From Macrostomum lignano (Eukaryota): DNA of 29,852 bases. The translations under genes and the position numbers were made by a program. Below are positions 10,455-29,852 of this stretch, piece by piece; position 1 is the first letter of the stretch; every line of letters begins with the position of its first letter. The notes below the pieces were generated by a model, which made no database searches, had not been told where the DNA came from, and saw only the letters and a program-made list of their open reading frames with translations. The stretch covers positions 1 to 29,852 of the forward strand of contig NIVC01004968.1 in NCBI GenBank assembly GCA_002269645.1, written 5' to 3'.

Positions 10455-10620
10455 TTGAAGGTCAGGGGTTCGATTCTTGATCCCACTAGAACAATTTGTG
10501 TCCTTGAGCAACACACTGAACTCTGCATTGCTTCAGTTCACCCAGCTGTAAAATGGATGCCAGCATTAGCTGAGGTAATTAAAGGTGTGCGTGGCGACCC
10601 CCCACAGTCCTTGGACTGAA
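10455..10620 (+). mobile_element. tRNA-derived SINE fragment with CORE-like central domain, 5' truncated
   Basis: B-box-like GGTTCGATTC at 10467-10476. It is followed by TGTGTCCTTGAGCAACACACT...CTTCAGTTCACCCAGCTGTAAAATGG (10497-10556), resembling the CORE-SINE consensus TGTGTGACCTTGGGCAAGTCACT...CTCAGTTTCCTCATCTGTAAAATGG. No A box seen. Confidence 0.55.
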
Positions 10621-11405: not shown

Positions 11406-11437
11406 TATAAAAATAATTTCAATAAGTAAAACCTTAC

Positions 11438-11702: not shown

Positions 11703-14700
11703 TGAAAAAGGGGTGTTTATTAGTGACTATTGCAGGTAGCTTACGTGTGAATAAAAGGGGTGTTTATTAGTGACTATTGCAGGTAGCTTACGTGTGAATA
11801 AAAGGGGTGTTTATTAGTGACTATTGCAGGTAGCTTATGTGTGAATAAAAGGGGTGTTTATTAGTGACTATTGCAGGTAGTTTACGTGTGAATAAAAGGG
11901 GTGTTTATTAGTGACTATTGCAGGTAGCTTATGTGTGAATAAAAGGGGTGTTTATTAGTGACTATTGCAGGTAGCTTATGTGTGAATAAAAGGGGTGTTT
12001 ATTAGTGACTATTGCAGGTAGCTTATGTGTGAATAAAAGGGGTGTTTATTAGTGACTATTGCAGGTAGCTTACGTGTGAATAAAAGGGGTGTTTATTAGT
12101 GACTATTGCAGGTAGCTTACGTGTGAATAAAAGGGGTGTTTATTAGTGACTATTGCAGGTAGCTTACGTGTGAATAAAAGGGGTGTTTATTAGTGACTTT
12201 TGCAGGTAGTTTACGTGTGAATAAAAGGGGTGTTTATTAGTGACTATTGCAGGTAGCTTACGTGTGAATAAAAGGGGTGTTTATTAGTGACTATTGCAGG
12301 TAGCTTACGTGTGAATAAAAGGGGTGTTTATTAGTGACTTTTGCAGGTAGTTTACGTGTGAATAAAAGGGGTGTTTATTAGTGACTATTGCAGGTAGCTT
12401 ATGTGTGAATAAAAGGGGTGTTTATTAGTGACTATTGCAGGTAGCTTATGTATGAATAAAAGGGGTGTTTATTAGTGACTTTTGCAGGTAGTTTACGTGT
12501 GAATAAAAGGGGTGTTTATTAGTGACTATTGCAGGTAGCTTATGTGTGAATAAAAGGGGTGTTTATTAGTGACTATTGCAGGTAGCTTATGTGTGAATAA
12601 AAGGGGTGTTTATTAGTGACTATTGCAGGTAGTTTACGTGTGAATAAAAGGGGTGTTTATTAGTGACTATTGCAGGTAGCTTATGTGTGAATAAAAGGGG
12701 TGTTTATTAGTGACTATTGCAGGTAGCTTACGTGTGAATAAAAGGGGTGTTTATTAGTGACTATTGCAGGTAGCTTACGTGTGAATAAAAGGGGTGTTTA
12801 TTAGTGACTATTGCAGGTAGCTTATGTGTGAATAAAAGGGGTGTTTATTAGTGACTATTGCAGGTAGTTTACGTGTGAATAAAAGGGGTGTTTATTAGTG
12901 ACTATTGCAGGTAGCTTATGTGTGAATAAAAGGGGTGTTTATTAGTGACTATTGCAGGTAGCTTATGTGTGAATAAAAGGGGTGTTTATTAGTGACTATT
13001 GCAGGTAGCTTATGTGTGAATAAAAGGGGTGTTTATTAGTGACTATTGCAGGTAGCTTACGTGTGAATAAAAGGGGTGTTTATTAGTGACTATTGCAGGT
13101 AGCTTACGTGTGAATAAAAGGGGTGTTTATTAGTGACTATTGCAGGTAGCTTACGTGTGAATAAAAGGGGTGTTTATTAGTGACTTTTGCAGGTAGTTTA
13201 CGTGTGAATAAAAGGGGTGTTTATTAGTGACTATTGCAGGTAGCTTACGTGTGAATAAAAGGGGTGTTTATTAGTGACTATTGCAGGTAGCTTACGTGTG
13301 AATAAAAGGGGTGTTTATTAGTGACTTTTGCAGGTAGTTTACGTGTGAATAAAAGGGGTGTTTATTAGTGACTATTGCAGGTAGCTTATGTGTGAATAAA
13401 AGGGGTGTTTATTAGTGACTATTGCAGGTAGCTTATGTGTGAATAAAAGGGGTGTTTATTAGTGACTTTTGCAGGTAGTTTACGTGTGAATAAAAGGGGT
13501 GTTTATTAGTGACTATTGCAGGTAGTTTACCTGTGAATTAAAGGGGTGTTTATTAGTGACTATTGCAGGTAGCTTATGTGTGAATAAAAGGGGTGTTTAT
13601 TAGTGACTATTGCAGGTAGTTTACGTGTGAATAAAAGGGGTGTTTATTAGTGACTATTGCAGGTAGCTTATGTGTGAATAAAAGGGGTGTTTATTAGTGA
13701 CTATTGCAGGTAGCTTACGTGTGAATAAAAGGGGTGTTTATTAGTGACTATTGCAGGTAGCTTACGTGTGAATAAAAGGGGTGTTTATTAGTGACTTTTG
13801 CAGGTAGTTTACGTGTGAATAAAAGGGGTGTTTATTAGTGACTATTGCAGGTAGCTTACGTGTGAATAAAAGGGGTGTTTATTAGTGACTTTTGCAGGTA
13901 GTTTACGTGTGAATAAAAGGGGTGTTTATTAGTGACTATTGCAGGTAGCTTATGTGTGAATAAAAGGGGTGTTTATTAGTGACTATTGCAGGTAGCTTAC
14001 GTGTGAATAAAAGGGGTGTTTATTAGTGACTATTGCAGGTAGCTTACGTGTGAATAAAAGGGGTGTTTATTAGTGACTTTTGCAGGTAGTTTACGTGTGA
14101 ATAAAAGGGGTGTTTATTAGTGACTATTGCAGGTAGCTTACGTGTGAATAAAAGGGGTGTTTATTAGTGACTTTTGCAGGTAGTTTACGTGTGAATAAAA
14201 GGGGTGTTTATTAGTGACTATTGCAGGTAGTTTACGTGTGAATAAAAGGGGTGTTTATTAGTGACTATTGCAGGTAGCTTATGTGTGAATAAAAGGGGTG
14301 TTTATTAGTGACTATTGCAGGTAGCTTATGTGTGAATAAAAGGGGTGTTTATTAGTGACTTTTGCAGGTAGTTTACGTGTGAATAAAAGGGGTGTTTATT
14401 AGTGACTATTGCAGGTAGTTTACCTGTGAATAAAAGGGGTGTTTATTAGTGACTATTGCAGGTAGCTTACGTGTGAATAAAAGGGGTGTTTATTAGTGAC
14501 TATTGCAGGTAGCTTATGTGTGAATAAAAGGGGTGTTTATTAGTGACTATTGCAGGTAGTTTACGTGTGAATAAAAGGGGTGTTTATTAGTGACTATTGC
14601 AGGTAGCTTATGTGTGAATAAAAGGGGTGTTTATTAGTGACTATTGCAGGTAGCTTATGTGTGAATAAAAGGGGTGTTTATTAGTGACTATTGCAGGTAG

Positions 14701-15270
14701 TTTACGTGTGAATAAAAGGGGTGTTTATTAGTGACTATTGCAGGTAGCTTATGTGTGAATAAAAGGGGTGTTTATTAGTGACTATTGCAGGTAGCTTATG
14801 TGTGAATAAAAGGGGTGTTTATTAGTGACTATTGCAGGCAGCTTATGTGTGAATAAAAGGGGTGTTTATTAGGGACTATTGCAGGTAGCTTATGTGTGAA
14901 TAAAAGGGGTGTTTATTAGGGACTATTGCAGGTAGCTTATGTGTGAATAAAAGGGGTGTTTATTAGTGACTATTGCAGGTAGCTTATGTGTGAATAAAAG
15001 GGGTGTTTATTAGTGACTATTGCAGGTAGCTTATGTGTGAATAAAAGGGGTGTTTATTAGGGACTATTGCAGGTAGCTTATGTGTGAATAAAAGGGGTGT
15101 TTATTAGGGACTATTGCAGGTAGCTTATGTGTGAATAAAAGGGGTGTTTATTAGGGACTATTGCAGGTAGCTTATGTGTGAATAAAAGGGGTGTTTATTA
15201 GTGACTATTGCAGGTAGTTTATGCATCAATAATAACAGGGGGTGTTTATTAGGAATCATTGCAGGTAGCT
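11703..15270. repeat. 47-bp tandem array (GTGAATAAAAGGGGTGTTTATTAGTGACTATTGCAGGTAGCTTA(C/T)GT)n, about 75 copies, filling most of a GALNT intron
   Basis: Period 47 (11751/11798); near-identical units with no spacers; last unit degenerate. Confidence 0.99.
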
Positions 15271-15769: not shown

Positions 15770-16620
15770 TAAAGCGATTTTAAGGCGATTTTGAGCCAAC
15801 TCAAAGCAATTGTCCAGGCAAAATACAGGTAGTTTTCAAAGCGATTCTCAAGAAGAACTTTAAGCAATCTTCACGGCGCAATTCGGGCGAATCGATCGAA
15901 TCGAATCGATTCGGGATTTTCAAGGCAAAATTAAGGCGATTCTCAGAGCGAAATTAAGGCGATTCTCAGAGCGAAATTAAGGCGATTCTCAAGGCGAAGT
16001 TAGGGCGATCCTCAAGGTGAAATTAAGGTAATTTTCAAGGCGTAATAAAGAAATCTTAAGAACAAAATTACGAGATTCTCAAGGCGAAGTTAGGGCGATC
16101 CTCAAGGTGAAATGAAGGTAATTTTCAAGGCGTAATAAAGAAATCTTAAGAACAAAATTAGGAGATTCTCAAGGCGAAGTTAGGGCGATCCTCAAGGTGA
16201 AATTAAGGTAATTTTCAAGGCGTAATAAAGAAATCTTAAGAACAAAATTAGGAGATTCTCAAGGCAAAGTTAGGGCGATTCTAAAGGTGAAGTTAAGGCG
16301 ATTCTAAAGATTAATTTAAAGCGATACTCTGGGTGAATCTTAGGCGATTCGAAAGGTGAAGTTAAGGCGATTCTAAAAATTAATTTAAAGCGATTCTCTG
16401 GGTGAATCTTGGGCGATTCTCTGGGTGAATCTTGGGCGATTCTCTGGGTGAATCTTGGGCGATTCTCTGGGTGAATCTTGGGCGATTCTCTGGGTGAATC
16501 TTAGGCGGTTCTCAAGGTGAAGTTAAGGCGATTCTAAAGATTAATTTAAAGCGATACTCTGGGTGAATCTTAGGCGATTCTCAAGGTGAAGTTAAGGTGA
16601 TTCTCAGGATGTAATTAAAG
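15770..16620. repeat. Hierarchical degenerate repeat on an AAGGCGATTCTC-like base, including three 90-bp units and about five 23-bp units
   Basis: AAATCTTAAG at 16051, 16141 and 16231; CGATTCTCTGGGTGAATCTTGGG at 16391, 16414 and onward. Confidence 0.9.
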
Positions 16621-16808
16621 CAATTCCCAAGTAATGTGTTAAGGATGATGTTCTTCTGGAGGTGTACATACTCCCGGCTACGCATGAGGCGTACATCTGT
16701 GTATTCGATTCTCATGGCAATCAAAAAATTCTAGATTTAAACATTTTTCGATCAAATAGAGAACGATTTAAGCGCACACGATTTTCAGCTAGTTAGGTCG
16801 AAGTGCAG

Positions 16809-16879
16809 TCCGGAAAAATTGCCAACGAGGAGCGAAGCGAGCGAAGCGAGCGTAGCTCCTCGTTGGCAATTTTTTCGGA
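16809..16879. other. Long hairpin: 25-bp arms (one mismatch) around a GAAGCGAGCGAAGCGAGCGTA loop
   Basis: TCCGGAAAAATTGCCAACGAGGAGC (16809-16833) versus GCTCCTCGTTGGCAATTTTTTCGGA (16855-16879). Confidence 0.92.
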
Positions 16880-17060
16880 CAAACGAGACCGAGATAAGAT
16901 GTCCCGGAGACTCCCCCAACGTAAAATCAACGTTTTAGAAAATAAAATTGATGCAGAGTTAAAACCACTTGAGATGAAACCATGTGTGACCCCTCTATGG
17001 ACGTAAAACATTTAGGGCTACAAGATGTGTGACGTGAAAGTTCCATAGCAACGCGTCTTG

Positions 17061-17074
17061 GTTGCCATGGCAAC
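17061..17074. promoter_or_regulatory. Perfect RFX X-box-type palindrome GTTGCCATGGCAAC
   Basis: 14-bp palindrome matching the RFX consensus; related GTTCCATAGCAAC at 17040-17052. Function not shown. Confidence 0.4.
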
Positions 17075-17293
17075 AAAAAAGTGACTTTTTTTAGACCCGT
17101 CCAAATCTTGAATCTCAAAAAATAAGGATTCACAATATGGAGTCAAAAATTGATTGAACCCAACTTTTGGCGAATTTTCAGACCTTCAAGACACTGATTG
17201 GTTATTTTCCGCTAAATGCTTACCTTGATAGGTAATTCTGTAAAAGTGTGTTTTTTAAGTGTCAAAAAATGCGCATTTTTATCAACTTTCAAC

Positions 17294-17341
17294 TGACGCA
17301 GCTCAAAGGTCGCGCGTCAGCGCGACCTTTGAGCTGCGTCA
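17294..17341. other. Perfect hairpin: 22-bp stem, 4-nt loop
   Basis: TGACGCAGCTCAAAGGTCGCGC-GTCA-GCGCGACCTTTGAGCTGCGTCA. Confidence 0.95.
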
Positions 17342-17892
17342 TTCTAACAATGGCACCTGGGACTCTTACATGACGCACGACTTTAACCAAGATACTCACT
17401 TTAACTGTACATTCGCACCTGTTAATTACATTCGAATATTCGACGGGTAGGTATTCGAACCGAAATAAAGGAAATTCAACCTTGTTGCGAGACTCTAAAA
17501 AGTACATGAATGCGGTCATTTAGGTAAGATCTACATGTTTATAATACATTTTGAGCCGTTTCGTTGCACTGACTCTGAGCCATACACTGCTAAAGTCGAT
17601 AAACGTGATTTAGGCTATTTTTATGTATTTTTCATGATACAAATGTACAAAAAATAAGAAACGACGACATGCTAGGAAAATCAGACTTTTTAGGCAAGGT
17701 GCACAACTAAATTGCGCACAATATGTATATTTTGAAATTTCGTCTTAGTTTATTGAAGTCGCTGCCGGTACAGAAATGTACTTTAACGACGGTACGGGGG
17801 GCTTGCATATCGAACATACTTTTTAGCCTGTAACTTTTGAGCGGATTACCGGAGCGCGACGCGCTTGGTGTCATTGAACTACATTTTAGATG

Positions 17893-18955
17893 TACTTTAA
17901 TTTGAATGTATGTTCGCTGTCATTGCACGATGCGTTGTACACCTCAGGTCAGGTCACGTGACTTGCTGGAAATGAAATAATGACTTTGTACCTATACTAA
18001 GGATAGGTGAAGCGTAAGAATGAACCAAAATTTGTACTTATTAGAAACACCTAGATGACTACTGTCAGAAAAAATGATATTCACGTCTGTCAGTTGCAAA
18101 ATTTTGTTATAATTGACTTTTAAAATCGAAAAACGTGATTTTGTGCAAAAACAACCTATATGAGCACACATAGGGTGAAAAATTTATTGATTTTCGCTAT
18201 GAGGTTCTTAGCTTCCAAGAGCACTATTGTGCCCAGTAAACACGTACAGATGACTGCTATCTTCGTTAGTGTGCGAAAATTCGTATTTTTACGCTAATAA
18301 CATTTACCGAATTACGAGGTTCCGGTGTTATGCGTTTTTTTGCTATATTTCACGCTGCCATTTATTAACGATGCTACGCCAGGCCTTCAGTGTGGTGTCA
18401 ATAGTTAGCATTTAAAAAGTGCTTTAATTTGAGTGTATGTTCGCTGGCATTGCACGATGCGTTGTACACCTCAGGCCAGGTCACGTGACTTGCTGGAAAT
18501 GAAATAATGACTTTGTACCTATACTAAGGATAGGTGAAGCATAAGAATGACCCATATTAGTACTTATTAGAAACATCTAGATGAATACTCTCAGAAAAAG
18601 TGACATTCACGTCTGTCAGTTGCAAAAAAAATTTTTAATTGACTCTCAAAATCGAAAAACGTGATTTTGTGCAAAAACAACCCATTTGAGCACTACATAG
18701 GGCGGAAAATATATTAATTTTCGCTATGAGGTTCTTAGCTTCCAAGAGCACTATTGTGCCCAGTAAACACGTACAGATGACTGCCATCTTCGTTAGTGTG
18801 CGAAAATTCGTATTTTGACGCTATTAACATTTTACCGAATTACGAGGTTCCGGTACTATGCGTTTTTTTGCTATATTTCACGCTGCCATTTATTAACTAT
18901 CCTACGCCAGGCCTTCAGTGTAGTGTCAATAAATAGCATTTAGCAAGTGCTTTAA
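17893..18955. repeat. Direct tandem duplication of a ~528-bp unit (2 copies, roughly 90% identical by eye)
   Basis: CTTTAA junction motif at 17895, 18422 and 18950; shared blocks such as GTCACGTGACTTGCTGGAAATGAAATAATGACTTTGTACC. Confidence 0.93.
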
Positions 18956-20448
18956 GATGACATCATGCGCATTGCGTTGCGTAAAAGTGTGGGTCCACAG
19001 TTTCGTAACAAGTTAAAATGACCTGATTTCGCAAAAATCTTTAAAACAAAAAATACCAAATAGGTAACTAAAAAGCCTTTTGAAACTGAATAAAAAATGC
19101 ACATAAAAGTGCTATTTTGTAACGTAAAAAGTCTTGCGTCCTGCAAAAATCTTCTATGGTGACTTTTTGGAGCCGTGAAGTGTAAAAACGTGCGCATTTT
19201 TAAAGCTGTTGAACTTACTTTTTGAGGTATATTTTGAAAATAGGCATTTTATAAATTGTATAACAAAATTTAATTGAAGAAAGCAATAAGGTAAAATAGA
19301 ATTCGAAATTATTTAATTTTGAAATAATTAAACTGTACATTTCAGTCGTTCTGTTCCTTATAATTTCTACAAAAATTTAAATTTAAATCGGTTATGTTAA
19401 CAGTAGTTTATTGCTGTAGGACAAATTTGACCCCAAATTTTCAAAGCAACTTATCTAAGCAAACGCTATCTAAATCTGAAATATTTTCAAGCTTCAATCT
19501 GTAGCTATAATATTCGGTTTTGTTACGCTATTTATTCGTATCCTACTACATTATATATAATTATTGTACAATATATTATATTCTACAAGTACAAGTTTTA
19601 ATTGTAATATATTCAATTGTTATCAGTTTTACACTGTAAGTGTAAGCTTCAAATTTTATTTGAAATATAACTGAAGTATAGTACTTTAATATTATTTTAT
19701 AGCTAATTAATTGTATTCTGCCAAATATTTACGTTTTTTTTCTCTGCTTTGCTTTTTGCTCCATATTTTTATAAATTATAGTCATATTTACATATATCTT
19801 TTAAAAGTACTCATCCTTTCACATTTTATTTTGTAGTTATCAGTCAAATTTAACTTGAATTTTCCTTTTGTTTGCATAATTTTGACTTAAGACTTTAGTT
19901 TTGAAGTAAGTATTCTTTTTATTTCTTCATATGTTTAGCATAGTACAAATATCTGTAGTACTCTGCTTAATGGTAGAAGTTTGTGGACACTTTTTATAAA
20001 TTCTGCTCAATTTATTATAAATTTAGCATTTTTGCTAGACAATATATACATGCCAATGCTCCTTATATCAAGCAATGCTTGAAAGTGCTAGACACTTAGT
20101 TTATGGTGAATTTTTACCAAGGGATGTTTTTTTGCTGATATAGAATTCCTAGAAGCATGTACAAAAACATGGAATATGCCTGAAAAAACTCTAGAAAATA
20201 TGCACTAAATCCAAGAAAAAATGTTGAAAGCACAAAAACTACATGGCACACACCGCCTATATGCCAGTATATTATGCTGCAGCATATTAATCCACAATCC
20301 AGTAGCAGTGCTAGTGTTCGTAGTTTAACTAAATTTGCCACCAGAAAAGAGTTGAGTTAACTTGGTAAAGAGTAGCATGTTTTCTGTGTTTAGCTAATTA
20401 GTTTCTTTATCATTCTGAAATATTTACTAACATGTTTATTTAGACAGG

Positions 20449-20527
20449 ATGGGCAACGACAAAAACAGCATCAAGGACAACACTAGCATTAACAAGGATA
20501 CAAGTGCTTCTTCTGTTGCTGCCAATA
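20449..20527 (+). CDS. Predicted first coding exon of the Helitron RepHel gene
   Basis: ATG at 20449, preceded by TACTAAC (20425-20431) and AG acceptors; MGNDKNSIKDNTSINKDTSASSVAAN; donor A|GTAAGT, phase 1 matches exon 2. Confidence 0.6.
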
Positions 20528-20734
20528 GTAAGTTTTGTACATTTGTTGCAACTTGCAGGTGATAGGTGCTACTTTCAGGAATAGTTTCAAAGCAATCCTA
20601 CCTTTATTATTAATATTCACACCTTAGGAAACCAGCTTTTACTAGCATTCTTGGCTGCCCATTTGGGCAACAGACAAACTAAAAAGTTCCTGCACTACAC
20701 AATTTATTTACCAAACAATAAATCTCAATTGTTC

Positions 20735-21030
20735 ACACTATAACTCACACTGAATAGTTCACAGGTAATTCTGTAAAAAAGTGTTTTTCAGATGTCTAAA
20801 AATGTGAATTTTTCAAACTCTTAACTGACGCAGCTCAAATCAATAGTTCACACTCAATAGTTTAGATTGAATAGTTTCGCCTGAATAGTTTTGACAGACA
20901 GAATAATTTCAACTGAATAGTTACAACTGAATAGTTTAGACTTAATAATCTTGACTGAGTAGTTTTGACTGAATAGTGTGAACTCAATAGTTTCGACTGA
21001 GTAGTTTCGACTGAATAGTTTCGACAAAGG
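20735..21030. repeat. Degenerate minisatellite of (ACT)GAATAGTT(T) words inside RepHel intron 1
   Basis: More than 12 AATAGTT/AGTAGTT words, interrupted by a 77-bp insert at 20763-20839. Confidence 0.8.
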
Positions 21031-21242
21031 GAATAAATTCAATTGGAATCTGACCTTGTTTGACAGATCATTAAAATAATTATAGAAACTCTATTTTCGA
21101 ATGTTTAACACCCTTAGAATTTGAGCAGATTTAAGAAATTTTGACCACTGTATAATCAGTGCAAAATCTGCAATAGTTTAGAAAAAACGCTATCAAAATT
21201 GATCAAGAATGGCACGCTCTAGAGCGAAATAGATGGACAGAC

Positions 21243-21265
21243 ATATATATATATATATATATATA
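21243..21265. repeat. (AT)n microsatellite preceded by GGACAGAC
   Basis: Read directly. Confidence 0.9.
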
Positions 21266-21306
21266 GGTAGATTTATAAATTTCTTTTTTACTGTGACTTT
21301 AAACAG

Positions 21307-21678
21307 GTGCGAAAAAGTGCGGACGGCCGAAGAAGAAAAACTGGAGCCGCTCCAAGAATAATATTAAAGTTGCTGCTGTCGGTGATTTAACTGCTGGCGA
21401 AGAACAGATTCAAGAGCCAGATGTACAACCGGAAGCTGCTGCTGCCTCTTCTATTGCCGCTGCTGGGACTAAAGCTGGTGCTTCTGCTGATGCTGCTGCT
21501 AAAACTGAGTCTGTGATTAAGCTGGACGAGGCTGGTCTGGCTGCCCTGCTAGCTGAACATGATGCTGCTCTGGCCGACGCTCTGGCTGCTTCGGAATACC
21601 CCGTGGTCGAAGGTGATGCTGAAGTGCCCAATTCTGGTGCTGCTTACAATGAGCAACTTATAGGCTACTTGAGTGCTG
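21307..21678 (+). CDS. Predicted exon 2 of RepHel: GRP/AT-hook-like motif, Ala-rich linker, UIM-like motif
   Basis: Acceptor tttaaacAG|GT, donor G|GTGAGA; 372 nt, phase 1/1, stop-free: SAKKCGRPKKKNWSRSK...EHDAALADALAASE...GYLSA. Splices in frame to exon 3 (G+AT = D of DETG). Confidence 0.78.
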
Positions 21679-21863
21679 GTGAGAGTTTTATTTTTTATTG
21701 AATTTCTATGCATAGTACAAGTTAATTTTCTTTCTTACATCTGACTTTGCTTGCGAATATTGAAAATTAGATTTTAGTGTTTACGACTTGTGCAAAATAC
21801 AATTAATGCTCAATTCCTTAAAATTATCATACCTCACTGTTTAAGAGTTGTATTCTTTTACAG

Positions 21864-24800
21864 ATGAAACAGGTGCTACTGCAATGGATTTTGCCGAAGG
21901 TCATGTAACTGCTGCTGTACAAGTCCAACCTGTATGGGTTCCTTTTTCTTCGTGTCGCGTTGAGAATGTACGAGGTGACGGCAACTGTTTTTTCACGGCC
22001 ATATTGAGACAATTACAAGAACTGCCAGGTTTTTCCGCCTATCAATCGCTAAGCGTAGAAGATTTTCGAGATGCGGTTGCTGCAGAATTCGAGCAATGGG
22101 TGCATCGCGATGTCAATAATCAGGAAAGAATTATGCAAACAGGACTGAATTGGGAAAAAGTGCGCGACGATACAAGGCGTCCCCGTATGTACGTGCCATG
22201 CGGAGTTCCAGAACTAATTGGTGAACTGTTGCGGCTAGAAGTGTTTATTTATCAGTCAAACATGCTTAATCTAGCGCGGCCTGGCCATTATTCCCGACCG
22301 AATATTGGAGAACGTTTGGCTACTATTCGATTGTTGTTTAATCCTGGTAGTCAACACTACGAAATCGTTCGTGTCAATGATTTGGAAGTTAATGAAGCAA
22401 GCTCAGTTCGGCCGACTGGCCAAGGAGATTTGAGCGCCAAGAATGTGGAAATGCCCCCTCTCAACGAGAATGTTCATGTTGTCGAAGATCCTGTTGTAAT
22501 GATGCCACCTCCAGCTCCACCAATGACGCCTTTTGAAAAGGTTGCAGACTGGACCCGAGTTCAAAGTAGGCATTGGAAGGGACGTTGTAGAAATCAAGCA
22601 AAGTCCTTGGAAAATAATACGAGTTTGTTTGCGCATCCGAATTCATATGAAGTGCTTCGGGATCGGAACAACTCTGTCTGGAATTGGAATGTCGATCTTG
22701 ACGCGGAGGATAGCGCAGAGTCAGTTGAAATTGAGCATGTGTCAGAGTCAGTTAAAAGTGATCGTGTGTCAGAGTCCGTGCCATCAAATGTTCCGCGGCG
22801 CAGTCGGCGTAAAAAGGATGTTGGGAAGGCAAGTTGCGCTACGCGTCGGAGTAGTCGACTGAGCGCTAAAGCAAACACATTAGAGTCTGTGTCTGTTGCA
22901 GCCTCTAGTGTATCTGGTCAGAGCTTATTGAGAAGAAGCAGTCGCACTCGGAGAGCACCATGTTGCAGTTGCATCGGTTGTGGCGACTCAGTTTCGGCGG
23001 TTTCAAGCGTTTCTTGCCATTTGGAAAAAGGAAGAGGTCGAGAAAAGAAGAGCGACGTTGTACCAAGTGCTCCTACTCGTCGCAGCGAGCGTTTGAAAAA
23101 CCAGCAGCAAGTGGTCAACTATGCAAATTCTTTACCACGGAAACAGAGATTGACAAACGCAGAAAATCATATCTGCGAACCCGTTCGATCGTCGCCTAGG
23201 AAGACGGCACCTTTGCAGCAGGAGCAGCAAGATAAACGTCAGTCTGATAATATTCCAGCTACTTCTACGTATTCATCACCACGAAAGACACGTGCTACTC
23301 AGGAGAAGCCTGATGAAGCGATCCGTTCGTCACCCAGAAAGCGGCCTACAATGGAGCAGCAGCCAGCTAAAGAAAATGTTCCGCAGAGCAGCACTTCAGA
23401 AGAGAGCGCTCAAGATGCTCCAATTGTTGAAGATGAAATCGGAGATCCTAATCTGCCAAAGTGCCTTCGCAATCCGTTCACAGACCAGTTCAAAAAGATG
23501 AGGCAAGACTTTTTCAATGAAAACATAACAAAAGTATCACATTTGAAACAGTGCTACGTGTGTAGGGAAAAGTTTCCTGGAAAATATTTTAGCATCGATT
23601 CTGAAGACATGTGCGATCGTTGTTTCAGAGATGACAATGAGCCGAAATCGTTTAGCCAAGAAAACAATGCGATTCCGATGTTGGAGCAGCCAGAAGATTT
23701 GCAAGATTTGAGTGTAGCAGAGCAAATGTTGATTTCGCCAGTTTTGTCGGTTATTGTTGTGGTACAAATTTTTCCCCAAAAGCAAACAAAATCGAGAGGA
23801 CACGGAATCATGTTGCCTCAAGATCAGTCGCACGTTTTGCGAGAGCTGCCAAGACGATCTCTGCCAGTTGTTTTAATGTACGACGAAAGAGCCCGTGTTC
23901 AGCCTGGAGAAGCGCAAAGCGGCACAATGAACAATTTGCGAGTTCGACGCGACAAAGTGACTAATGCGATGCGCTATTTAATGGCAAACAACAAGTACTT
24001 TAGACAGTATCAGGTTTCAATGAATAATGATGCGTTGCTACATCTGCCTGAAGATGGTTATGCTCATCAAGTAGAAGGTATGATTGTCGAAATGCAGTCT
24101 GACAATGAAGTGAATTTCGAGGCGGCACAGCAAGAAGGCGGCTCAGCCAGAGCTGAGCGATTGCAGCAACAAGTAGAAAAAAATGCGGACGAGACGAACG
24201 AGCTCGAGGAAACAATTAGTTCGCTGTTGGAGACTCCTTTGCGTCGATTGGAATCGGCAGTACGAGACAAATTTTTGAGTGAAAAATTGAAATGGCCAGC
24301 AAGAAGCAACGAGCCGGTAAACGAATTTCAGGATGAAGGATATTTTACATTGGCTTATCCTCATCTCTTTCCGGATGGAGCAGGAGATTATAGTACGCCA
24401 CGTAATTTTGGACTAAGTTTGGGCGACTATGCAAAGCATTTGATGCAATTCCGGTGTCCAAGATTTCGTACCGATTTGCGGTTTAAATTTTACATTGAAA
24501 ATATGGTGATGCGTTGGAGGGCGCTGGAAGTTGGTCGCGTGTTTGTACACGACAACAAGTATGCTGGATTAAGTGCCAAGGAAATGATTGAAGCACTAAA
24601 TGACCCGGCAGTATTGGCTAGCGTGTCAGTTCGAGCATCAGATTTGCGAGGCACAAGCGCTTATTGGCAGAGTAAAGGACGGCAATTGGAAGCCATGATT
24701 CGAACGCTTGGTGTTCCTCATTTTTTCGTGACACTATCGGCAGCAGATGTACATTGGCCAGAGTTGCAGCATGCCTGGGGAATCGATGCAGAGCAATATG

Positions 24801-27800
24801 AAAGCAATGTAGAACTAAGAGCAGAAATGTTGTCAAAGTTGCAAAAAGATCCCGGAATGGCAGACACTGTGTTTTGGTTGCGATTTGAAACATGTTTGAA
24901 ACGTTTTTTGGTCGAGCACTGGAAAGTAAACGATTATTGGTTTCGCATAGAATATCAGAGTCGCGGAAGTCCACACGTTCACGGTTGCATTTGGATGCCA
25001 GATGGTGTTGATGTGACATCGAATACATTGAATGCAGAAGAATTGACGAGCTTTGTTGACAAGTACATCTGTAGTTGGAATTTGGCCATGGACGAATCGG
25101 ATTATGGAAATCAAGTTTTGAATGGCAGTTTAGCAGGTCAAGGTCATCCAGCTCAACTGAAACCGGAAGAGATTGAAAATGACAAGCAAGATTTGCAGTT
25201 AATTTCGCATTTGACAGAGAGGCACACTATTTGCAGTAAAAAGTGCTTGCGAACAGTAAAAGGCAAACAAGAGTGCCGATTCAAGTATCCGCGCGAGCCG
25301 CAGGAAAAGACTGTTGCAAAGCGAGTATCCCGTTTAAATTGGCAAGTTGAGACGCAGCGCAACGACGAGCGAATGATTTCTCACAGTCCGCAGTTGCTGT
25401 GCATGTGGAGAGCCAATGTCGATGTTCAAATGATTTCGTCCGTGAAGAATTTGATTCGCTATTTGATCAAGTATGCGACAAAAAGCGAAAAGGAGTCGGA
25501 TTATATGGCGGAGCTGACAAAGCGTCTTCATAAGGAGTTGGAAGATAATGCAGAACAGAATGCCGATAACAATTTTCAGCGTAGCAACACTGCAAGGCGT
25601 GTTGTACAACAACACTTGATGGCGCAAGTTGGAGCGCGTGATTATTCGGCGCAAGAGGCAATGCATTTGCTATTGCAGACGTCAATGTACAAGGGTTCGC
25701 GAGAATTTGTTTTTGTTCAGACTGGCGAAACCCGCGCAGTGGAGGAAAAGGGTGTTTGCAGGAATAGTTGCGACAAGTATTCAAAGCGTGCAAAGAATTT
25801 GGAAAATGTAACAATGTTTCGTTTCTTTTCCGACTACTGTCTCAGCCCTAATGGGAGGTGCACAAAAAGGCCGAAACAAGTAGTTTTGCTAATCAGTCCA
25901 TTTTTTCGACCGAATGAGCAATCAGACGAAAGACGCGAAGGCTATTATCGGCAGCAGGTTTTGTTGTACAGTTGTTGGCGAAATGAGCGAGAAGCCAAAG
26001 GTTTGCACACAAGCTGGCAGCAAGCGTACGAAGCCATGCCTGCTGAGAATCGATGCGAGCTGCAGCTGCCCAATTTGGACGATTTGCGCAACGACGAAGC
26101 TGACGAAGAAGTCGAAGCAGTTGCGGAGCTACCCGAAATGACCAACGCAAATGCGCAATCTGCTGCTCAGCCAACTTATGAGCACGAAGAGCAAGAAGAT
26201 TGGATGGTTGCAGTGGGGGCACTTCATCGCGAGAGAAATCTATTGGCCTGTCCAGAAGATCAATTGCCAAAGCCGCCAGAAAATTTTGACTGGAGCGCAG
26301 CTAGTGGCGGCCAGTTTCCAACGGTTGGAGAAGCAAAGGCGTTTTTAAGTAGCGACCTAAAACTTGGCGCAAGAGAGGTCGCTGACATGCCGATAAACAG
26401 TGTTGAATCGCTTAATGTTCGGCAGCGAGAAATGTACAACCTAATTGAAAGTCATTTGCAGCTTTCAAGACTAGCCGAAGAAAACCAAGGCGAAAAGCCG
26501 GAGCCTCTCAAAGCAATTTTGTATGGTAGCGCTGGAACTGGAAAAAGCTACTTGATTTCTACATTGCGTCGGTTGATTGGAGAATCAAGATGCAGAATTA
26601 TGGCATCAACAGGCGTAGCCGCTTTCAATATTGCAGGCGAAACTTTGCACTCGGCTTTGAAATTGAATGTAAATTTTAGTGCTGGTGTTGGCAAGAAATC
26701 CCTAATGGAGATGCAAGAGCAGTGGAAAGATGTGCGCTACATTTTTATTGACGAATTTAGCATGCTTGGCCAAAGGTTACTCCGTAAGGTGGATGCTCGT
26801 TTGCGCGAATTGTTTCCAGAACACAGTAAACAGAGTTTTGGTGGTCGATCTGTAATCCTAATTGGCGACGTGTTTCAATTGCCTCCAGTTTTGGACACGC
26901 AACTGTACGTTTACAATCCAAATCAAAAGAAGCACGATATATTGAAATCTGAAGGCTATAAATTGTACATGGAGTTCAAAAAGGTTGTGCATCTGACAGA
27001 ACAAGTCCGACAAGCAAACGATACGGAATTCGCCCAGTTGTTGGATAAACTTCGCGAAGGCAAGGCCGACGAAGCCTGCTGGAATTCGTTGATGAACAAT
27101 TGTCGCGTCTATGCTCCCGACCTTTTGCCTGAAGGTTTCCAAAGCGGGTGTACATTTTTATATCACACTAACGAGGATGTGAGAAATCGCAACTACATGC
27201 TATTGGGAAAGATGGTTTCCGAATTGAATCCTGTGCGGCAAATTAACGCAATTTGTAAAGGAGACGAAGCAAAATTGTGTGGCAAAAAGAAGGAACATAA
27301 AAAATCGGATACGAATCTGGAGAAGCGACTCTATTTGTGTATTGGTGCTCGAGTAATGCTAACTAGAAATCTGTCAGTACGCAATGGACTTGTGAATGGA
27401 TCAGTTGGAACTGTACGAGGAATTTGCTACGCTCCTGGAAGGCAATCACCAAAGGATTGGCCAGATTGTATTTGGGTTGAATTTGACAATTATTCTGGCC
27501 CAGCAATGGGGGCAATTGTACAAGATAATCGTGCAATTCGTGTAGTGCCAATTCTGTCAGTAACGAATGAAAAGTTTAAAGGAGGAGCCCAATTGTCGCG
27601 TCAACAATTTCCACTACGATTGGCTTGGGCTAGTACGATTCACAAGAGCCAAGGACTTACAATTCCAAAAGCGTACGTGGCGTTTAGCAAAGGAGGCGCC
27701 AGGAAAGCTATTCCAGCTGGATTATTTTATACTGCGGTGAGTAGAGTTCGTGCATTTGCAGATTTGCGAGTATCAAGTTGCGATTACAACAATTTCGTGA

Positions 27801-27892
27801 GCCTTTTTTCTGCACAAAAAGTGCAGACGCAGTTGCATGAGCAAAAGCGTTTGCTGAGAATGTGCTCATCCGCGAATTCTGATAGCCGCTAA
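21864..27892 (+). CDS. Helitron Rep-helicase main exon: OTU protease, basic disordered linker, Cys motif, HUH Rep, PIF1 (SF1B) helicase
   Basis: Acceptor attcttttacAG|AT. OTU GDGNCFF (Cys at 21986) and HY (His at 22355); CYVC..CDRC; EGYFTLAYPHLFPDGAGD; FFVTLSAAD; RGSPHVH (HUH, 24974-24982); YLIKYATK (25460-25483); Walker A GSAGTGKS (26525); DEFSML; GDVFQLPPV; QVRQ; TIHKSQGLT. No stop in 6 kb. Confidence 0.95.
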
Positions 27893-27905: not shown

Positions 27906-29852
27906 AGTCGGCAACTATTTAGTCAGCAACTATCCATCCAGTCAGCATCCGTCCAGTCAGCAGCCGTCAGTCAGCAACAATCCAGTCAGCAACCATCCAG
28001 TCAGCAACCATCCAGTCAGCAAACATCCATCCAGTCAGCAACCATTCGTCCAGTCAGCATCCATCCAGTCAGCAACCATCCAGTCAGCAACCATCCAGTC
28101 AGCATCCGTCCAGTCAGCAGCCATCCAGTCAGCAACCGTCCATCCAGTCAGCAACAATCCAGTCAGCAATCATCCAGTCAGCAACCATCCAGTCACAACC
28201 ATCCAGTCAGCAGTCATCCAGTCAGCAACCATCCGTCCAGTCAGCAACCATCCGTCCAGTCAGCAATCATCCGTCCAGTCAGCGACCATCCAGTCGGCAA
28301 CCATCCAGTCACAACCATACGTCCAGTCAGCAACCATCCAGTCAGCAACCATCCAGTCAGCAACCATCCATCCATTCAGCAACCATCCAGTCAGCAACCA
28401 TCCAGTCAGCAACCATCCAGTCAGCAACCATTCGTCCAGCAACCATCCATCCAGTCAGCAACAATCCAGTCAGCAACCATCCAGTCAGCAAACATCCATC
28501 CAGTCAGCAACCATTCGTCCAGTCAGCATCCATCCAGTCAGCAACCATCCAGTCAGCAACCATCCAGTCAGCATCCGTCCAGTCAGCAGCCATCCAGTCA
28601 GCAACCGTCCATCCAGTCAGCAACAATCCAGTCAGCAATCATCCAGTCAGCAACCATCCAGTCACAACCATCCAGTCAGCAGTCATCCAGTCAGCAACCA
28701 TCCAGTCAGCAACCATCCGTCCAGTCAGCAATCATCCGTCCAGTCAGCGACCATCCAGTCGGCAACCATCCAGTCACAACCATACGTCCAGTCAGCAACC
28801 ATCCAGTCAGCAACCATCCAGTCAGCAACCATCCATCCATTCAGCAACCATCCAGTCAGCAACCATCCAGTCAGCAACCATCCAGTCAGCAACCATTCGT
28901 CCAGCAACCATCCATCCAGTCAGCAACAATCCAGTCAGCAACCATCCAGTCAGCAACCATCCAGTCAGCAACCATCCATCCAGTCAGCAACCATCCAGTC
29001 AGCAGCCATCCTGTCAGCAGCCATCCAGTCAAGCCGTCCAGTCAGCAGCCATCCAGTCAGCAACCGTCCATCCAGTCAGCACAATCCAGTCAGCGACCAT
29101 CCAGTCAGCAACCATCCAGTCAGCAACCATCCAGTCAACAACAGTCCATCCAGTCAGCAAACATCCATCATCAGCACCATCCAGTCAACAACAGTCCATC
29201 CAGTCAGAACCATCCATCCAGTCAGCAACAATCCAGTCACAACCATACATCCAGTCAGCAACCATCCAGTCAGCAACCATCCGTCCAGTCAGCAACCATC
29301 CAGTCAGCAGCCATCCTGTCAGCAGCATCCAGTCAGCAGCCATCCAGTCAGCAACCGTCCATCCAGTCAGCACCATCAGTCAACAACCATCCAGTCAGCG
29401 ACCATCCAGTCAGCAACCATCCAGTCAGCAACCATCCAGTCAGCAAACATCCATCCAGTCAGCAACCATCCAGTCAACAACAGTCCATCAAGTCAGCAAC
29501 CAATCATCCAGCGCAACAATCCAGTCAGCAACAATCCAGTCAGCAACATCAGTCACAACCATACATCCAGTCAGCAACCATCCAGTCAGCAACCGTCCAT
29601 CCAGTCAGCAACAATCCAGTCAGCACAATCCAGTCAGCAACCGTCCATCCAGTCAGCAACATCCAGTCAGCAACCATCCATCCAGTCAGCACCGTCAGTC
29701 AACAACCATCCAGTCAGCGACCATCCAGTCAGCAACATCCAGTCAGCAACATCCATGTCAAACAGCAGTCCATCCAGTCAGCAACATCCATCCAGTCAGC
29801 AACCATCCAGTCAAACAACAGTCCATCCAGTCAGCACCACCATCCAGTCAGC
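27906..29852. repeat. 15-bp minisatellite (CATCCAGTCAGCAAC)n with 19-bp variants, over 100 copies, running off the window
   Basis: Read directly; the WLLTG-type ORFs are repeat translations. Confidence 0.98.

What the first reader, a model, noticed from the sequence alone, without database searches (positions are those of the whole stretch)
21307..23341. Candidate new system: rolling-circle transposase with a chromatin-deubiquitination module
In order, before the Rep domain: GRP/AT-hook-like motif, UIM-like motif, OTU protease with intact Cys/His, an HMGN-like RRSSRLSAK plus related RRSxR motifs, and three SPRK motifs. OTU domains in animal Helentrons are established; I do not know this combination with ubiquitin-binding and nucleosome-anchor motifs as described. 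Hypothesis: the protein docks on nucleosomes and removes ubiquitin (e.g. H2A/H2B marks, or its own degradation tags) at donor or target sites, countering silencing.
Basis: partly seen in the sequence, partly recalled or inferred. Interest (0 to 1): 0.85.

Follow-up and report, generated by a model that had tools for sequence, protein, structure and literature searches.

The report
Flatworm Helitron transposase with nucleosome-anchored deubiquitinase
This is an intact, recently active rolling-circle transposon of the flatworm Macrostomum lignano; in front of its transposase sits an OTU ubiquitin protease and a conserved copy of the short arginine motif that HMGN and tardigrade Dsup proteins use to grip nucleosomes, a combination that I did not find described in the literature searched.

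Summary
They lie in a three-exon gene (20449-20527, 21307-21678, 21864-27892) encoding a 2159-aa RepHel. The same protein is encoded at seven other Macrostomum lignano loci with different flanks.

The element is a roughly 15-kb Helitron2-type transposon without an endonuclease domain. Its 5' end is at 16789 and its 3' end lies beyond the window.

- **OTU domain:** real. A family profile hits OTUD3 at E 2.7e-10, the AF2 model has pLDDT 87.5, and all top fold matches are OTU deubiquitinases. The catalytic residues Cys192 and His315 are present.
- **TRRSSRLSAKA:** matches the validated nucleosome acidic-patch anchors of HMGN, Dsup and yeast Dot5. It is invariant in a paralogous family whose linker is only 31% identical, and it is far beyond chance.
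- **Relatives:** similar motifs occur only in related RepHels with an N-terminal OTU or USP protease. Two close relatives carry a Ulp1 protease instead.
- **SPRK and other RRSxR motifs:** non-random and mostly conserved.
- **UIM:** compatible with chance and not conserved.
- **AT-hook:** non-canonical.

OTU fused to RepHel is already known, so this is not a new system. It is a new variant: a probable chromatin-anchored ubiquitin or Ubl protease module. Nucleosome binding and histone deubiquitination remain untested.

The parts
16789..16880 (+). 5' terminus of the element (CTAGTTAGGTCGAAGTGCAG...) with a 31-nt subterminal palindrome at 16808-16880
   Evidence: Four copies (window, L003, L004, L006) become identical exactly here and have unrelated upstream flanks. 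AGGTCGAAGTGC is repeated in inverted orientation near the 3' end of complete copies.
16881..20448 (+). 5' non-coding region of the element, with a ~527-bp tandem duplication at 17866-18960
   Evidence: About 99.4% identical to the other copies. No ORF of 100 aa or more and nothing coding-like.
20449..20527 (+). Exon 1: ATG and the first 26 codons (MGNDKNSIKDNTSINKDTSASSVAAN), donor A|GTAAGT
   Evidence: The sequence was read. The three-exon translation is 2159 aa with no internal stop. It equals P0165, P0004 and P0005.
20528..21306 (+). Intron 1 (GTAAGT...AAACAG), containing a 14-bp tandem array at 20852-21025
21307..21678 (+). Exon 2: basic patch with an AT-hook-like KKCGRPKKKN (21312-21341), then an alanine-rich acidic segment with the UIM-like LADALAAS (21549-21599)
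   Evidence: The basic KKxGR.PK patch is conserved in P0180 and the UIM-like core is not.
21679..21863 (+). Intron 2 (GTGAGA...TTACAG)
   Evidence: The junction is in phase, G|AT giving Asp. It equals P0165.
21864..27892 (+). Exon 3, running to the stop codon: the rest of the 2159-aa RepHel
   Evidence: ORF. It is 100% identical over 2008 aa to P0165. There are 0 variable sites in 6480 exon nt among 8 copies.
21917..22387 (+). OTU deubiquitinase domain (aa 169-325), with Cys192 in GDGNCFF and His315 in QHYE
   Evidence: Profile A3 hits OTUD3 4bou at E 2.7e-10, plus nairovirus vOTUs and OTUD5. The AF2 model has pLDDT 87.5. The Foldseek top 50 are all OTU domains. D, G, C and H are invariant in six RepHel OTUs.
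22499..22711 (+). Two conserved short motifs in the linker: MMPPPAPPM (22499-22525) and WNVDLDAED (22685-22711, SIM-like)
   Evidence: Invariant blocks between the two Macrostomum families. VDLD followed by an acidic or serine-rich stretch also occurs in P0124, P0060 and P0065, and ADLD in P0011.
22793..23098 (+). Arginine-motif cluster: PRRSRRKK (22793-22816), HMGN/Dsup-like TRRSSRLSAKA (22841-22873), RRSSRTRR (22931-22954), PTRRSERLK (23072-23098)
   Evidence: Coordinates. RRSRR, TRRSSRLSAKA and PTRRSERL are invariant in P0002, P0003 and P0180, while the surrounding linker is 31% identical.
23126..23347 (+). SPRK cluster: LPRK and three SSPRK (S-P-x-K, the SPKK/CDK-site type)
   Evidence: Coordinates. 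Two RSSPRK motifs are conserved in P0180. Three or more SP[RK]K appear in 5e-6 of shuffles.
23453..24019 (+). Conserved LPKCLRNPF box, Cys-rich zinc-finger-like CxxC...CxxC, and DUF6570
   Evidence: Pfam DUF6570 at E 2.5e-18.
24428..25483 (+). HUH Rep domain (Helitron_like_N), with RGSPHVH at 24974-24988 and the YLIKY tyrosines at 25457-25483
   Evidence: Pfam Helitron_like_N at E 1e-29. RG-S-PHxH is the Helentron-type signature (PMC4067079).
26516..27892 (+). PIF1-like SF1 helicase (Walker A GSAGTGKS at 26525-26548, 2B and C-terminal domains). No endonuclease domain follows.
   Evidence: Pfam PIF1 at E 6.9e-27, plus Pif1_2B and UvrD_C_2, with no Exo_endo_phos hit.
27906..29852 (+). 15-bp tandem array inside the element, cut by the end of the window. 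In complete copies it runs 2.7-5.7 kb and is followed by ~1 kb ending ...AAGGTGGCACACCTTCAATCTAGT

Best explanation
**What it is (shown).** The region is the 5' half of the single gene of an intact, very young, multicopy Helitron2-type rolling-circle transposon of Macrostomum lignano. The element is related to Helentrons but has no endonuclease domain. Its 2159-aa RepHel carries an N-terminal accessory module in this order:
- a basic patch;
- an alanine-rich acidic segment;
- an OTU-fold cysteine protease with its catalytic Cys and His;
- a ~350-aa low-complexity linker that evolves fast, apart from a few invariant short motifs: PPPxPP, VDLD followed by acidic residues, RRSRR, TRRSSRLSAKA, PTRRSERL and RSSPRK.

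**How it most likely works (inferred).**
- The OTU domain is an active deubiquitinase.
- The RRSSRL motif acts like the HMGN, Dsup and Dot5 motif. Its arginines anchor the protein on the H2A-H2B acidic patch of nucleosomes.
- The flanking basic and SPRK motifs add DNA contacts, nuclear import or CDK-dependent control.
- The transposase is therefore tethered to chromatin together with its own deubiquitinase.
- The protease then acts on ubiquitin conjugates on or next to nucleosomes at donor or target sites. Candidates are H2A or H2B ubiquitin marks, damage-signalling ubiquitin, or the transposase itself.

Which substrate is cleaved is speculation.
For: **Identity of the element**
- Pfam finds DUF6570, Helitron_like_N and PIF1.
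- The three-exon product is identical to P0165, which is encoded at 7 other loci.
- There are 0 differences in 6480 exon nt among the 8 copies.
- The copies share termini and have unrelated flanks, with an asymmetric terminal inverted repeat and a 3' hairpin.

**OTU domain**
- The profile hits OTUD3 at E 2.7e-10.
- The AF2 model has pLDDT 87.5.
- All top fold matches are OTU deubiquitinases.
- The catalytic residues are invariant.

**Arginine anchor**
- RRSSRLSAK combines Dsup's RRSSRL with HMGN's RLSAK. The motif arginines of both proteins were seen by cryo-EM in the acidic patch (PMC12487698).
- Yeast Dot5 RRSARIAT has been validated by mutation (PMC13347269).
- The motif is invariant between two families whose linkers are 31% identical.
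- It appears in 6e-4 of composition-matched shuffles.
- In relatives outside Macrostomum, [RK][RK]S[AST]R[LI] occurs 5 times in the 2,921 N-terminal residues of 7 protease-bearing RepHels.
- It occurs 0 times in 17,323 N-terminal residues of 141 others, and 0 times in 125,399 further residues.
- One of those relatives, P0019, pairs two such motifs and five canonical RGRP AT-hooks with a USP protease rather than OTU.

**Precedents**
- The H2AK119 deubiquitinases USP21 and BAP1 dock on the acidic patch with an arginine anchor (PMC12513422).
- Helitron-encoded VTD deubiquitinases are active (PMC9741609).
Against: - There is no functional data of any kind for this protein.
- Only the 8-9 residue core resembles HMGN. 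No HMG14_17 Pfam match was listed in the scan of the N-terminal 700 aa, and the lysine-rich DNA-contacting tail of HMGN is absent.
- RRxS motifs are also basophilic-kinase sites, and arginine clusters are also nuclear import signals.
- The relaxed pattern used for relatives (K allowed for R) was defined after seeing the hits. Only 3 proteins outside Macrostomum carry it.
- The carriers may share ancestry. Subclades have 88-92% bootstrap support and the union is unresolved. The co-occurrence with proteases is therefore not several independent events.
- Other OTU-bearing RepHels (P0042, P0071, P0072) lack the motif.
- The third catalytic position is Glu here and varies among relatives.
- All 8 copies are identical, so there is no within-family signal of selection.
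Confidence: 0.5

Rival explanations
1. The protease has nothing to do with nucleosomes. The OTU domain removes K48-type chains from the transposase or from host factors to prevent their proteasomal degradation, or blunts cullin or innate signalling. The RRSxR, SPRK and basic motifs are nuclear import signals and kinase sites (PKA or Aurora at RRxS, CDK at SPxK) that time nuclear entry and activity to S phase or mitosis.
For: - This is the function proposed for Helitron VTD deubiquitinases, which prefer K48, K63 and K11 chains (PMC9741609).
- SPRK is a perfect CDK consensus and RRSS a perfect basophilic-kinase consensus (established knowledge).
- PRRSRRKK and SPRKRP look like classical import signals (sequence).
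- OTU-bearing RepHels without an HMGN-like motif exist: P0042, P0071 and P0072.
Against: - A generic import signal or kinase site does not explain invariance of the full 11-residue TRRSSRLSAKA.
- It does not explain the residue-for-residue match to three experimentally validated acidic-patch anchors.
- Phosphoregulation and nucleosome binding are not exclusive. HMGN binding is itself switched off by serine phosphorylation within the motif.
Confidence: 0.3
2. The arginine motif is a chromatin tether for the transposase only. It would serve nuclear retention through mitosis or target-site choice, as in KSHV LANA or foamy-virus Gag. The OTU domain has an unrelated task, such as self-processing of the RepHel polyprotein.
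For: - Acidic-patch tethers in LANA and foamy-virus Gag are established knowledge (my recollection, not checked here).
- Cleavage of the RepHel subunits by the OTU protease was proposed by Thomas et al. 2014 (PMC4067079).
- The position of the motif relative to the protease varies. It is downstream in the window protein and P0011, and upstream in P0124 and P0019.
Against: - In this sample the motif was found only in RepHels that also carry a ubiquitin protease.
- The protease class was exchanged (OTU, USP, Ulp1) while the protease stayed at the N-terminus. That points to deconjugation of ubiquitin or a ubiquitin-like modifier, not self-cleavage.
- The closest solved structures are true deubiquitinases.
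Confidence: 0.12
3. The N-terminal region is a passively captured host gene fragment, or an annotation artefact, with no role in the element.
For: - Helitron-like elements capture gene fragments, and accessory domains are described as often fragmented and possibly not essential (PMC11417382).
- Gene models of this family are inconsistent. P0001 is fused to Kazal exons, P0005 runs into the tandem array, and the window's own product P0008 starts at Met363.
Against: - The region is in frame with RepHel through two canonical introns, and is identical in 8 copies.
- Catalytic residues and motif blocks are retained in a family that is 25-32% identical across this region.
- They are also retained in more distant relatives.
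Confidence: 0.05

Closest known systems
Helitron2 / Helentron (HLE2) rolling-circle transposons with an OTU domain upstream of RepHel (Thomas et al. 2014, PMC4067079; HELIANO 2024, PMC11417382)
   Same: - RepHel with DUF6570, an HUH Rep carrying the RG-S-PHxH signature, and a PIF1 helicase.
- An OTU domain at the N-terminus.
- An asymmetric terminal inverted repeat, palindromes near both ends and a 3' hairpin.
- An internal tandem-repeat array and no target-site duplication.
   Different: - There is no C-terminal AP endonuclease, so it is not a Helentron in the strict sense.
- The 5' flanks are G or A rather than T.
- The linker between OTU and the zinc finger carries HMGN-like, SPRK and VDLD motifs. 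None of the papers read here mention these for such elements.
Zebrafish Helentron VTD deubiquitinases (Erven et al. 2022, PMC9741609)
   Same: A ubiquitin protease domain encoded in the RepHel reading frame of a Helitron-like element. Some of those elements also carry OTU.
   Different: - VTD is a different protease class.
- Activity has been shown for VTD and never for a transposon OTU.
- No nucleosome-binding motif was reported. The proposed role was protection from proteasomal degradation.
HMGN-type nucleosome-binding motif: vertebrate HMGN (RRSARLSA), tardigrade Dsup (RRSSRLTS), yeast Dot5 (RRSARIAT) (PMC12487698, PMC13347269)
   Same: The core RRS[A/S]R[L/I] with three arginines in a low-complexity region. 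The window has RRSSRLSAK, identical to Dsup over RRSSRL and to HMGN over RLSAK.
   Different: - There is no homology outside the motif, and no HMG14_17 match was listed in the Pfam scan.
- The motif sits in a 2159-aa transposase with three further RRSxR motifs.
- Binding is untested.
Histone H2AK119 deubiquitinases that dock on the acidic patch (USP21, BAP1/ASXL1; PMC12513422). The SAGA DUB module is a further example (my recollection).
   Same: A ubiquitin protease combined with an arginine anchor for the H2A-H2B acidic patch.
   Different: - In those enzymes the anchor is part of the folded catalytic domain or of a partner subunit.
- Here it lies on a flexible linker about 150 residues from an OTU domain.
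- The substrate here is unknown.
Chromatin tethers of other mobile or persistent elements: KSHV LANA N-terminus and foamy-virus Gag chromatin-binding sequence (my recollection, not checked here)
   Same: A short arginine-anchor peptide that fixes a parasitic element's protein to the acidic patch.
   Different: Those are viral proteins with unrelated motif sequences and no protease. No DNA transposase with such a motif turned up in the literature searches.

Membership tests
Helitron2-type (HLE2) rolling-circle transposon | RepHel protein: HUH Rep domain plus PIF1-like SF1 helicase in one reading frame | tested here: met
   Pfam Helitron_like_N at E 1e-29 and PIF1 at E 6.9e-27. HVH, YLIKY and Walker A GSAGTGKS are present.
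Helitron2-type (HLE2) rolling-circle transposon | HLE2/Helentron-type protein signatures: DUF6570, and Ser in the RG-S-PHxH motif | tested here: met
   DUF6570 at E 2.5e-18. The sequence reads EYQSRGSPHVHG. The criteria come from PMC11417382 and PMC4067079.
Helitron2-type (HLE2) rolling-circle transposon | Asymmetric terminal inverted repeats, palindromes near both ends, 3' hairpin | tested here: met
   The 5' AGGTCGAAGTGC is inverted subterminally at the 3' end of complete copies. The hairpin AAGGTG-GCA-CACCTT lies before the end. The 5' palindrome is at 16808-16880. The 3' end itself lies outside the window.
Helitron2-type (HLE2) rolling-circle transposon | Multiple copies with identical ends, unrelated flanks and no target-site duplication | tested here: met
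   There are 8 copies. Four have a readable 5' junction and 7 a readable 3' junction. No duplicated flank was seen.
Helitron2-type (HLE2) rolling-circle transposon | Insertion within a TT dinucleotide | tested here: inconclusive
   3' flanks begin with T in 5 of 7 copies. 5' flanks end in G, A, A and G. No empty site was available.
Helentron in the strict sense | C-terminal apurinic/apyrimidinic endonuclease domain | tested here: not met
   There is no Exo_endo_phos match, and the ORF stops after the helicase at 27892.
OTU deubiquitinase | OTU fold | tested here: met
   The AF2 model has pLDDT 87.5 and pTM 0.84. The Foldseek top 50 are all OTU domains: OTUD5, CCHFV vOTU, OTUD3 and OTUD1, with TM about 0.6.
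OTU deubiquitinase | Catalytic Cys in the D-G-x-C loop, and catalytic His | tested here: met
   Cys192 (GDGNCFF) and His315 (QHYE). D, G, C and H are invariant in six RepHel OTU domains.
OTU deubiquitinase | Significant sequence similarity to the family | tested here: met
   The family profile A3 hits OTUD3 at E 2.7e-10. The window sequence alone is below Pfam's cut-off at 12.5 vs 23.3 bits. The paralog reaches 22.0 bits and P0124 38.5 bits.
OTU deubiquitinase | Isopeptidase activity on ubiquitin or a ubiquitin-like modifier | not testable with these tools
   This needs an enzyme assay. No transposon OTU has been assayed (PMC9741609).
HMGN-like nucleosome-binding motif (HMGN / Dsup / Dot5 type) | Core RRS[A/S]R[L/I] with three arginines | tested here: met
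   RRSSRL at aa 478-483. It appears in 6e-4 of linker shuffles.
HMGN-like nucleosome-binding motif (HMGN / Dsup / Dot5 type) | Conserved among relatives while the surrounding sequence diverges | tested here: met
   Invariant in P0002, P0003, P0007 and P0180, in a linker that is 31% identical. Variants occur in P0011, P0019 and P0124.
HMGN-like nucleosome-binding motif (HMGN / Dsup / Dot5 type) | Binds the H2A-H2B acidic patch | not testable with these tools
   This needs nucleosome binding assays. Published work notes that AlphaFold 3 handles HMGN-nucleosome complexes poorly.
HMGN protein family | Homology to the HMG14/17 family beyond the core motif | tested here: not met
   No HMG14_17 match was listed at E up to 1 in the N-terminal 700 aa; HMMER's filters drop most matches above about 0.1. 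The lysine-rich segment that follows the motif in HMGN is absent.
Ubiquitin-interacting motif (UIM) | Consensus of acidic residues, a hydrophobic residue, xxAxxxS, then an acidic residue, beyond chance and conserved | tested here: not met
   The core LADALAAS is present, but it appears in 32% of shuffles and in 7% with acidic flanks. It aligns to LCDDTRDC in P0180. No UIM match was listed in the Pfam scan.
AT-hook | R-G-R-P core flanked by basic residues | tested here: inconclusive
   The window has KKCGRPKKK, with Cys in place of the first Arg. The paralog has KKTGRKPKR. Relative P0019 has five canonical RGRP hooks.
SPKK/SPRK motif (histone H1 type; CDK consensus S-P-x-K/R) | Repeated S-P-[KR]-K in a basic disordered region | tested here: met
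   Three SSPRK motifs plus LPRK. Three or more appear in 5e-6 of shuffles. Two are conserved in P0180. DNA binding or phosphorylation was not testable.

The most novel reading that the evidence does not exclude
A lineage of Helitron2-type transposons carries a modular, chromatin-anchored deconjugase at the N-terminus of the transposase. The protease is interchangeable: OTU, USP, or the SUMO-type Ulp1. It is combined with an HMGN/Dsup-type arginine anchor for the nucleosome acidic patch and a SIM-like VDLD motif. The module would erase ubiquitin or SUMO marks on or next to nucleosomes at donor or target sites. Candidates are H2AK119ub, H2AK13/15ub, H2Bub or SUMO-dependent silencing marks. The effect would be to escape silencing or damage signalling during rolling-circle transposition. 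This would be the first DNA transposase with a built-in nucleosome reader and eraser. It would also be a fourth independent occurrence of the HMGN-type motif.
Probability: 0.25. Interest if true: 0.85.

Novelty: new variant of a known kind. Interest (0 to 1): 0.62.

Why it matters
**For transposon biology.** Accessory ubiquitin proteases recur in Helitron-like elements, and their purpose is an open question. One class (VTD) has been shown to be active, but no substrate or site of action is known. A conserved nucleosome acidic-patch anchor next to the protease gives a concrete and testable answer: the protease acts on chromatin.

[quoted passage not shown] A transposase family would be an unexpected member. 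It would also be an example of a genomic parasite using the same nucleosome hotspot as LANA or foamy-virus Gag.

**Practical points.** M. lignano is a transgenic model. This element has 8 identical intact copies and is likely active. Both in-vitro and in-vivo tests are therefore feasible.

Tried and rejected
- **Spliced-leader start codon.** I considered whether exon 2, which has no ATG, is supplied with a start by trans-splicing. From my recollection of the leader sequence the frame does not fit. The real start is the ATG at 20449 in an upstream exon.
- **Kazal-domain N-terminus of gene model P0001.** Those exons are not in the window, and other copies start at MGNDK. It is a chimeric gene model.
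- **Single-sequence AF2 of the OTU region.** It gave pLDDT 43 and was unusable. It was repeated with an alignment.
- **Word-indexed homolog searches.** The N-terminal query, the OTU alignment and the 150-sequence alignment returned 3, 7 and 10 proteins.
- **Exhaustive profile search.** The profile unintentionally included the paralog's DUF6570 and Rep columns, so the top 150 hits were chosen by Rep similarity and not by the N-terminus. That was useful as a sample of relatives, but it is not a census of the motif.
- **Metagenome scan.** The 3-sequence alignment gave only two short loci.
- **Independent recurrence.** I first read the motif in P0011, P0019 and P0124 as independent events. A tree of the Rep region groups them near the Macrostomum families, so shared ancestry is at least as likely.
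- **Within-family selection test.** It is impossible, because the 8 copies have no exon differences.
- **Other genes in the element.** A search of the 3.7-kb 5' region found none.

Full report
**Origin and gene structure**

The window is Macrostomum lignano DNA. The long ORF at 21848-27892 matches only M. lignano proteins closely. Pfam finds DUF6570, Helitron_like_N, REP_ORF2-G2P, PIF1, Pif1_2B and UvrD_C_2 in it. That is a RepHel rolling-circle transposase. No endonuclease domain is present.

- 21307-21678 is an exon bounded by the acceptor AAACAG| and the donor G|GTGAGA.
- 21679-21863 is an intron.
- The ORF resumes at 21864 after TTTTACAG|, in phase.
- This exon has no ATG. The start lies in a further exon, 20449-20527 (ACAGGATGG, donor A|GTAAGT).

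The three-exon translation is 2159 aa with no internal stop. It is identical to database protein P0165 over its first 194 aa and over all 2008 aa compared in exon 3.

Other gene models of this family are faulty.
- P0001 is fused to Kazal exons that are not in the window.
- P0005 reads into the tandem array.
- The window's own annotated product P0008 starts at Met363 and so omits the OTU domain.

**The element**

P0165 is encoded exactly at seven other loci. Those copies match the window at about 99.4% from 16789 to the end of the window. Among the 8 copies, none of the 6480 exon positions varies.

Four copies share the 5' end CTAGTTAGGTCGAAGTGCAG at window position 16789, with unrelated upstream flanks. 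Seven copies share a 3' end ...GCACTTCGACCTGCTAAGGTGGCACACCTTCAATCTAGT, which lies beyond the window.

- The 5' AGGTCGAAGTGC is repeated in inverted orientation near the 3' end.
- The hairpin AAGGTG-GCA-CACCTT lies between that repeat and the terminus.
- A 31-nt palindrome lies at 16808-16880.
- No target-site duplication is seen.

These are the features described for Helitron2 (PMC4067079). The Rep motif RGSPHVH carries the Helentron-type serine. DUF6570 is almost exclusive to the Helitron2/Helentron group (PMC11417382). A complete copy is about 15.4 kb. It includes a multi-kb 15-bp tandem array that begins at 27906. The element is therefore young, multicopy and probably active.

**OTU domain**

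The window sequence alone scores below Pfam's cut-off (12.5 bits). The evidence for an OTU domain comes from the family.
- A six-sequence alignment of RepHel OTU domains keeps D, G, C and H invariant.
- As a profile, that alignment hits OTUD3 (E 2.7e-10), nairovirus OTU proteases and OTUD5.
- AF2 with that alignment gives pLDDT 87.5 and pTM 0.84.
- The 50 best PDB fold matches are all OTU domains.

The catalytic residues are Cys192 and His315. The residue two positions after His is Glu here and varies among relatives.

**The linker motifs**

I compared the protein with the paralogous M. lignano family P0180/P0002.

| Region | Identity to P0180 |
|---|---|
| N-terminus | 25% |
| OTU domain | 32.5% |
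| Linker (aa 326-680), with 80 gaps | 31% |
| RepHel core | 55-62% |

Within the linker, several blocks are invariant:
- PPPxPP
- WNVDLDA
- RRSRR
- SC.TRRSSRLSAKA
- PTRRSERL
- two RSSPRK

Shuffles that keep the linker's composition give these frequencies:
- RRS[AST]R[LI]: 6e-4.
- Four or more RRSxR: 0 of 200,000.
- Three or more SP[RK]K: 5e-6.

By contrast, the UIM-like core appears in 32% of shuffles of the alanine-rich exon-2 peptide. It aligns to unrelated residues in P0180. The AT-hook-like CGRPKKK becomes GRKPKR in P0180. Only a basic N-terminal patch is conserved.

**What RRSSRLSAK resembles**

- Cryo-EM shows that HMGN2 (RRSAR) and tardigrade Dsup (PPRRSSRLT) sit on the H2A-H2B acidic patch through their arginines (PMC12487698).
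- Yeast Dot5 RRSARIAT binds nucleosomes in a way that depends on the motif and on the acidic patch (PMC13347269).
- The window motif equals Dsup over RRSSRL and HMGN over RLSAK.
- Outside the motif there is no similarity to HMGN, and no HMG14_17 match was listed in the Pfam scan.

**Relatives**

An exhaustive profile search returned 3785 RepHel relatives. The 150 best were examined. Outside Macrostomum, [RK][RK]S[AST]R[LI] occurs in three proteins from different sample sources:
- P0011: OTU, then ADLD followed by a Ser/Asp-rich stretch, then KRKSSRIAKK.
- P0124: two R(R/K)KSARIAN, then OTU, then VDLDE.
- P0019: five RGRP AT-hooks, RRSARIAAQ and RRSTRLQ, then a USP domain (Pfam UCH, E 1.5e-36).

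The counts are as follows:
- 5 hits in 2,921 N-terminal residues of 7 protease-bearing RepHels.
- 0 hits in 17,323 N-terminal residues of 141 others.
- 0 hits in 125,399 remaining residues.
- Fisher p = 0.003 on proteins.

Two caveats apply. The relaxed pattern was chosen after seeing the hits. The carriers are also related to each other.
- {window protein, P0180, P0011} has 92% bootstrap support.
- {P0124, P0060, P0065, P0091} has 88%.
- One distance method joins both groups with P0019 in a single clade, but that union has only 21% bootstrap support.

In the second group, P0060 and P0091 carry a Ulp1/Peptidase_C48 domain in place of OTU. P0091 has the near-match TRSSARL. OTU-bearing RepHels elsewhere in the tree (P0042, P0071, P0072) lack the motif.

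The simplest reading is a lineage-specific N-terminal module. In it the protease class has been exchanged, while short chromatin-type motifs persist.

**Mechanism**

Shown:
- the identity of the element;
- the OTU fold and catalytic residues;
- the conservation and non-randomness of the motifs.

Inferred:
- The OTU domain is an active deubiquitinase. Helitron VTD domains are active; transposon OTU domains have not been tested.
- RRSSRL anchors the protein on the acidic patch.
- The SPRK and basic motifs add DNA contact, nuclear import or CDK control.

Speculative: the tethered protease removes ubiquitin from histones or from chromatin-bound proteins. USP21 and BAP1 show that H2AK119 deubiquitinases use an acidic-patch arginine anchor. 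Thomas et al. 2014 had already suggested a chromatin or self-cleavage role for the Helentron OTU.

Rival readings are protection from degradation combined with import and kinase motifs, a tether unrelated to the protease, and a passively captured fragment.

**Novelty and verdict**

OTU, USP, VTD and Ulp1 domains in Helitron-like elements are known. The full-text searches found no paper linking Helitrons or transposases with HMGN-like motifs. The library covers only open-access papers and preprints.

This is a new variant of a known kind, not a new system. Its hypothesis is plausible but untested.

Noticed in passing
window 22685-22711 (aa 425-433): WNVDLDAED is a conserved 'VDLD followed by an acidic or serine-rich stretch' motif downstream of the protease. 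It is invariant in the paralog family, which has a second copy. It also occurs in P0124, P0060 and P0065, and as ADLD in P0011. It resembles SUMO-interaction motifs of the VDLT type. In P0060 it follows a SUMO-type Ulp1 protease.
   Followed up: partly
relatives P0060 (aa 109-226), P0091 (aa 273-380), P0019 (aa 471-738): Close RepHel relatives carry Ulp1/Peptidase_C48 or USP/UCH proteases in the position where this element has OTU. The protease class has been exchanged within the lineage.
   Followed up: partly
window 27906-29852, and L002-L008: A 15-bp tandem array (consensus CCATCCAGTCAGCAA) is an internal part of the transposon in all copies. Its length varies between about 2.7 and 5.7 kb. 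It resembles the Helentron-borne satellite arrays described in other animals. One gene model (P0005) wrongly translates it.
   Followed up: partly
window 17866-18960: A ~527-bp tandem duplication (88-95% identity) lies in the non-coding 5' region of the element and is present in the other copies too.
   Followed up: no
window 20852-21025: A 14-bp tandem array (ACTGAATAGTTTCG, 12 copies) lies inside intron 1 of the transposase gene.
   Followed up: no
window 7259-7765 and 9698-10528, minus strand: These are host gene exons. One encodes a ricin-B lectin domain (E 4e-29), the other Glycos_transf_2 and Glyco_transf_7C domains. This is the domain set of a polypeptide GalNAc-transferase. An 18-bp array (8678-9655) lies between the two ORFs.
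   Followed up: partly
window 1-994, 1516-2250, 10640-11406, 11706-15270, 15915-16631: The host DNA upstream of the element is dominated by tandem arrays with periods of 22, 74, 34, 47 and 23 bp. The 47-bp array has 76 copies at 96% match and a GC skew of about +0.6.
   Followed up: no
window 21848-27892; proteins P0001, P0005, P0008: Public gene models for copies of this element disagree. P0001 is fused to upstream Kazal exons, P0005 extends into the satellite, and the window's own model P0008 starts at Met363 and lacks the OTU domain. Only P0165 (2159 aa) fits the three-exon structure.
   Followed up: yes
relatives P0043 (aa 7-11), P0055 (aa 10-14): RepHel fragments from other branches of the tree begin with RRSAR or RRSSR just upstream of the zinc finger and DUF6570. 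The arginine core may therefore be more widespread in Helitron2-type N-termini than the strict pattern shows.
   Followed up: no
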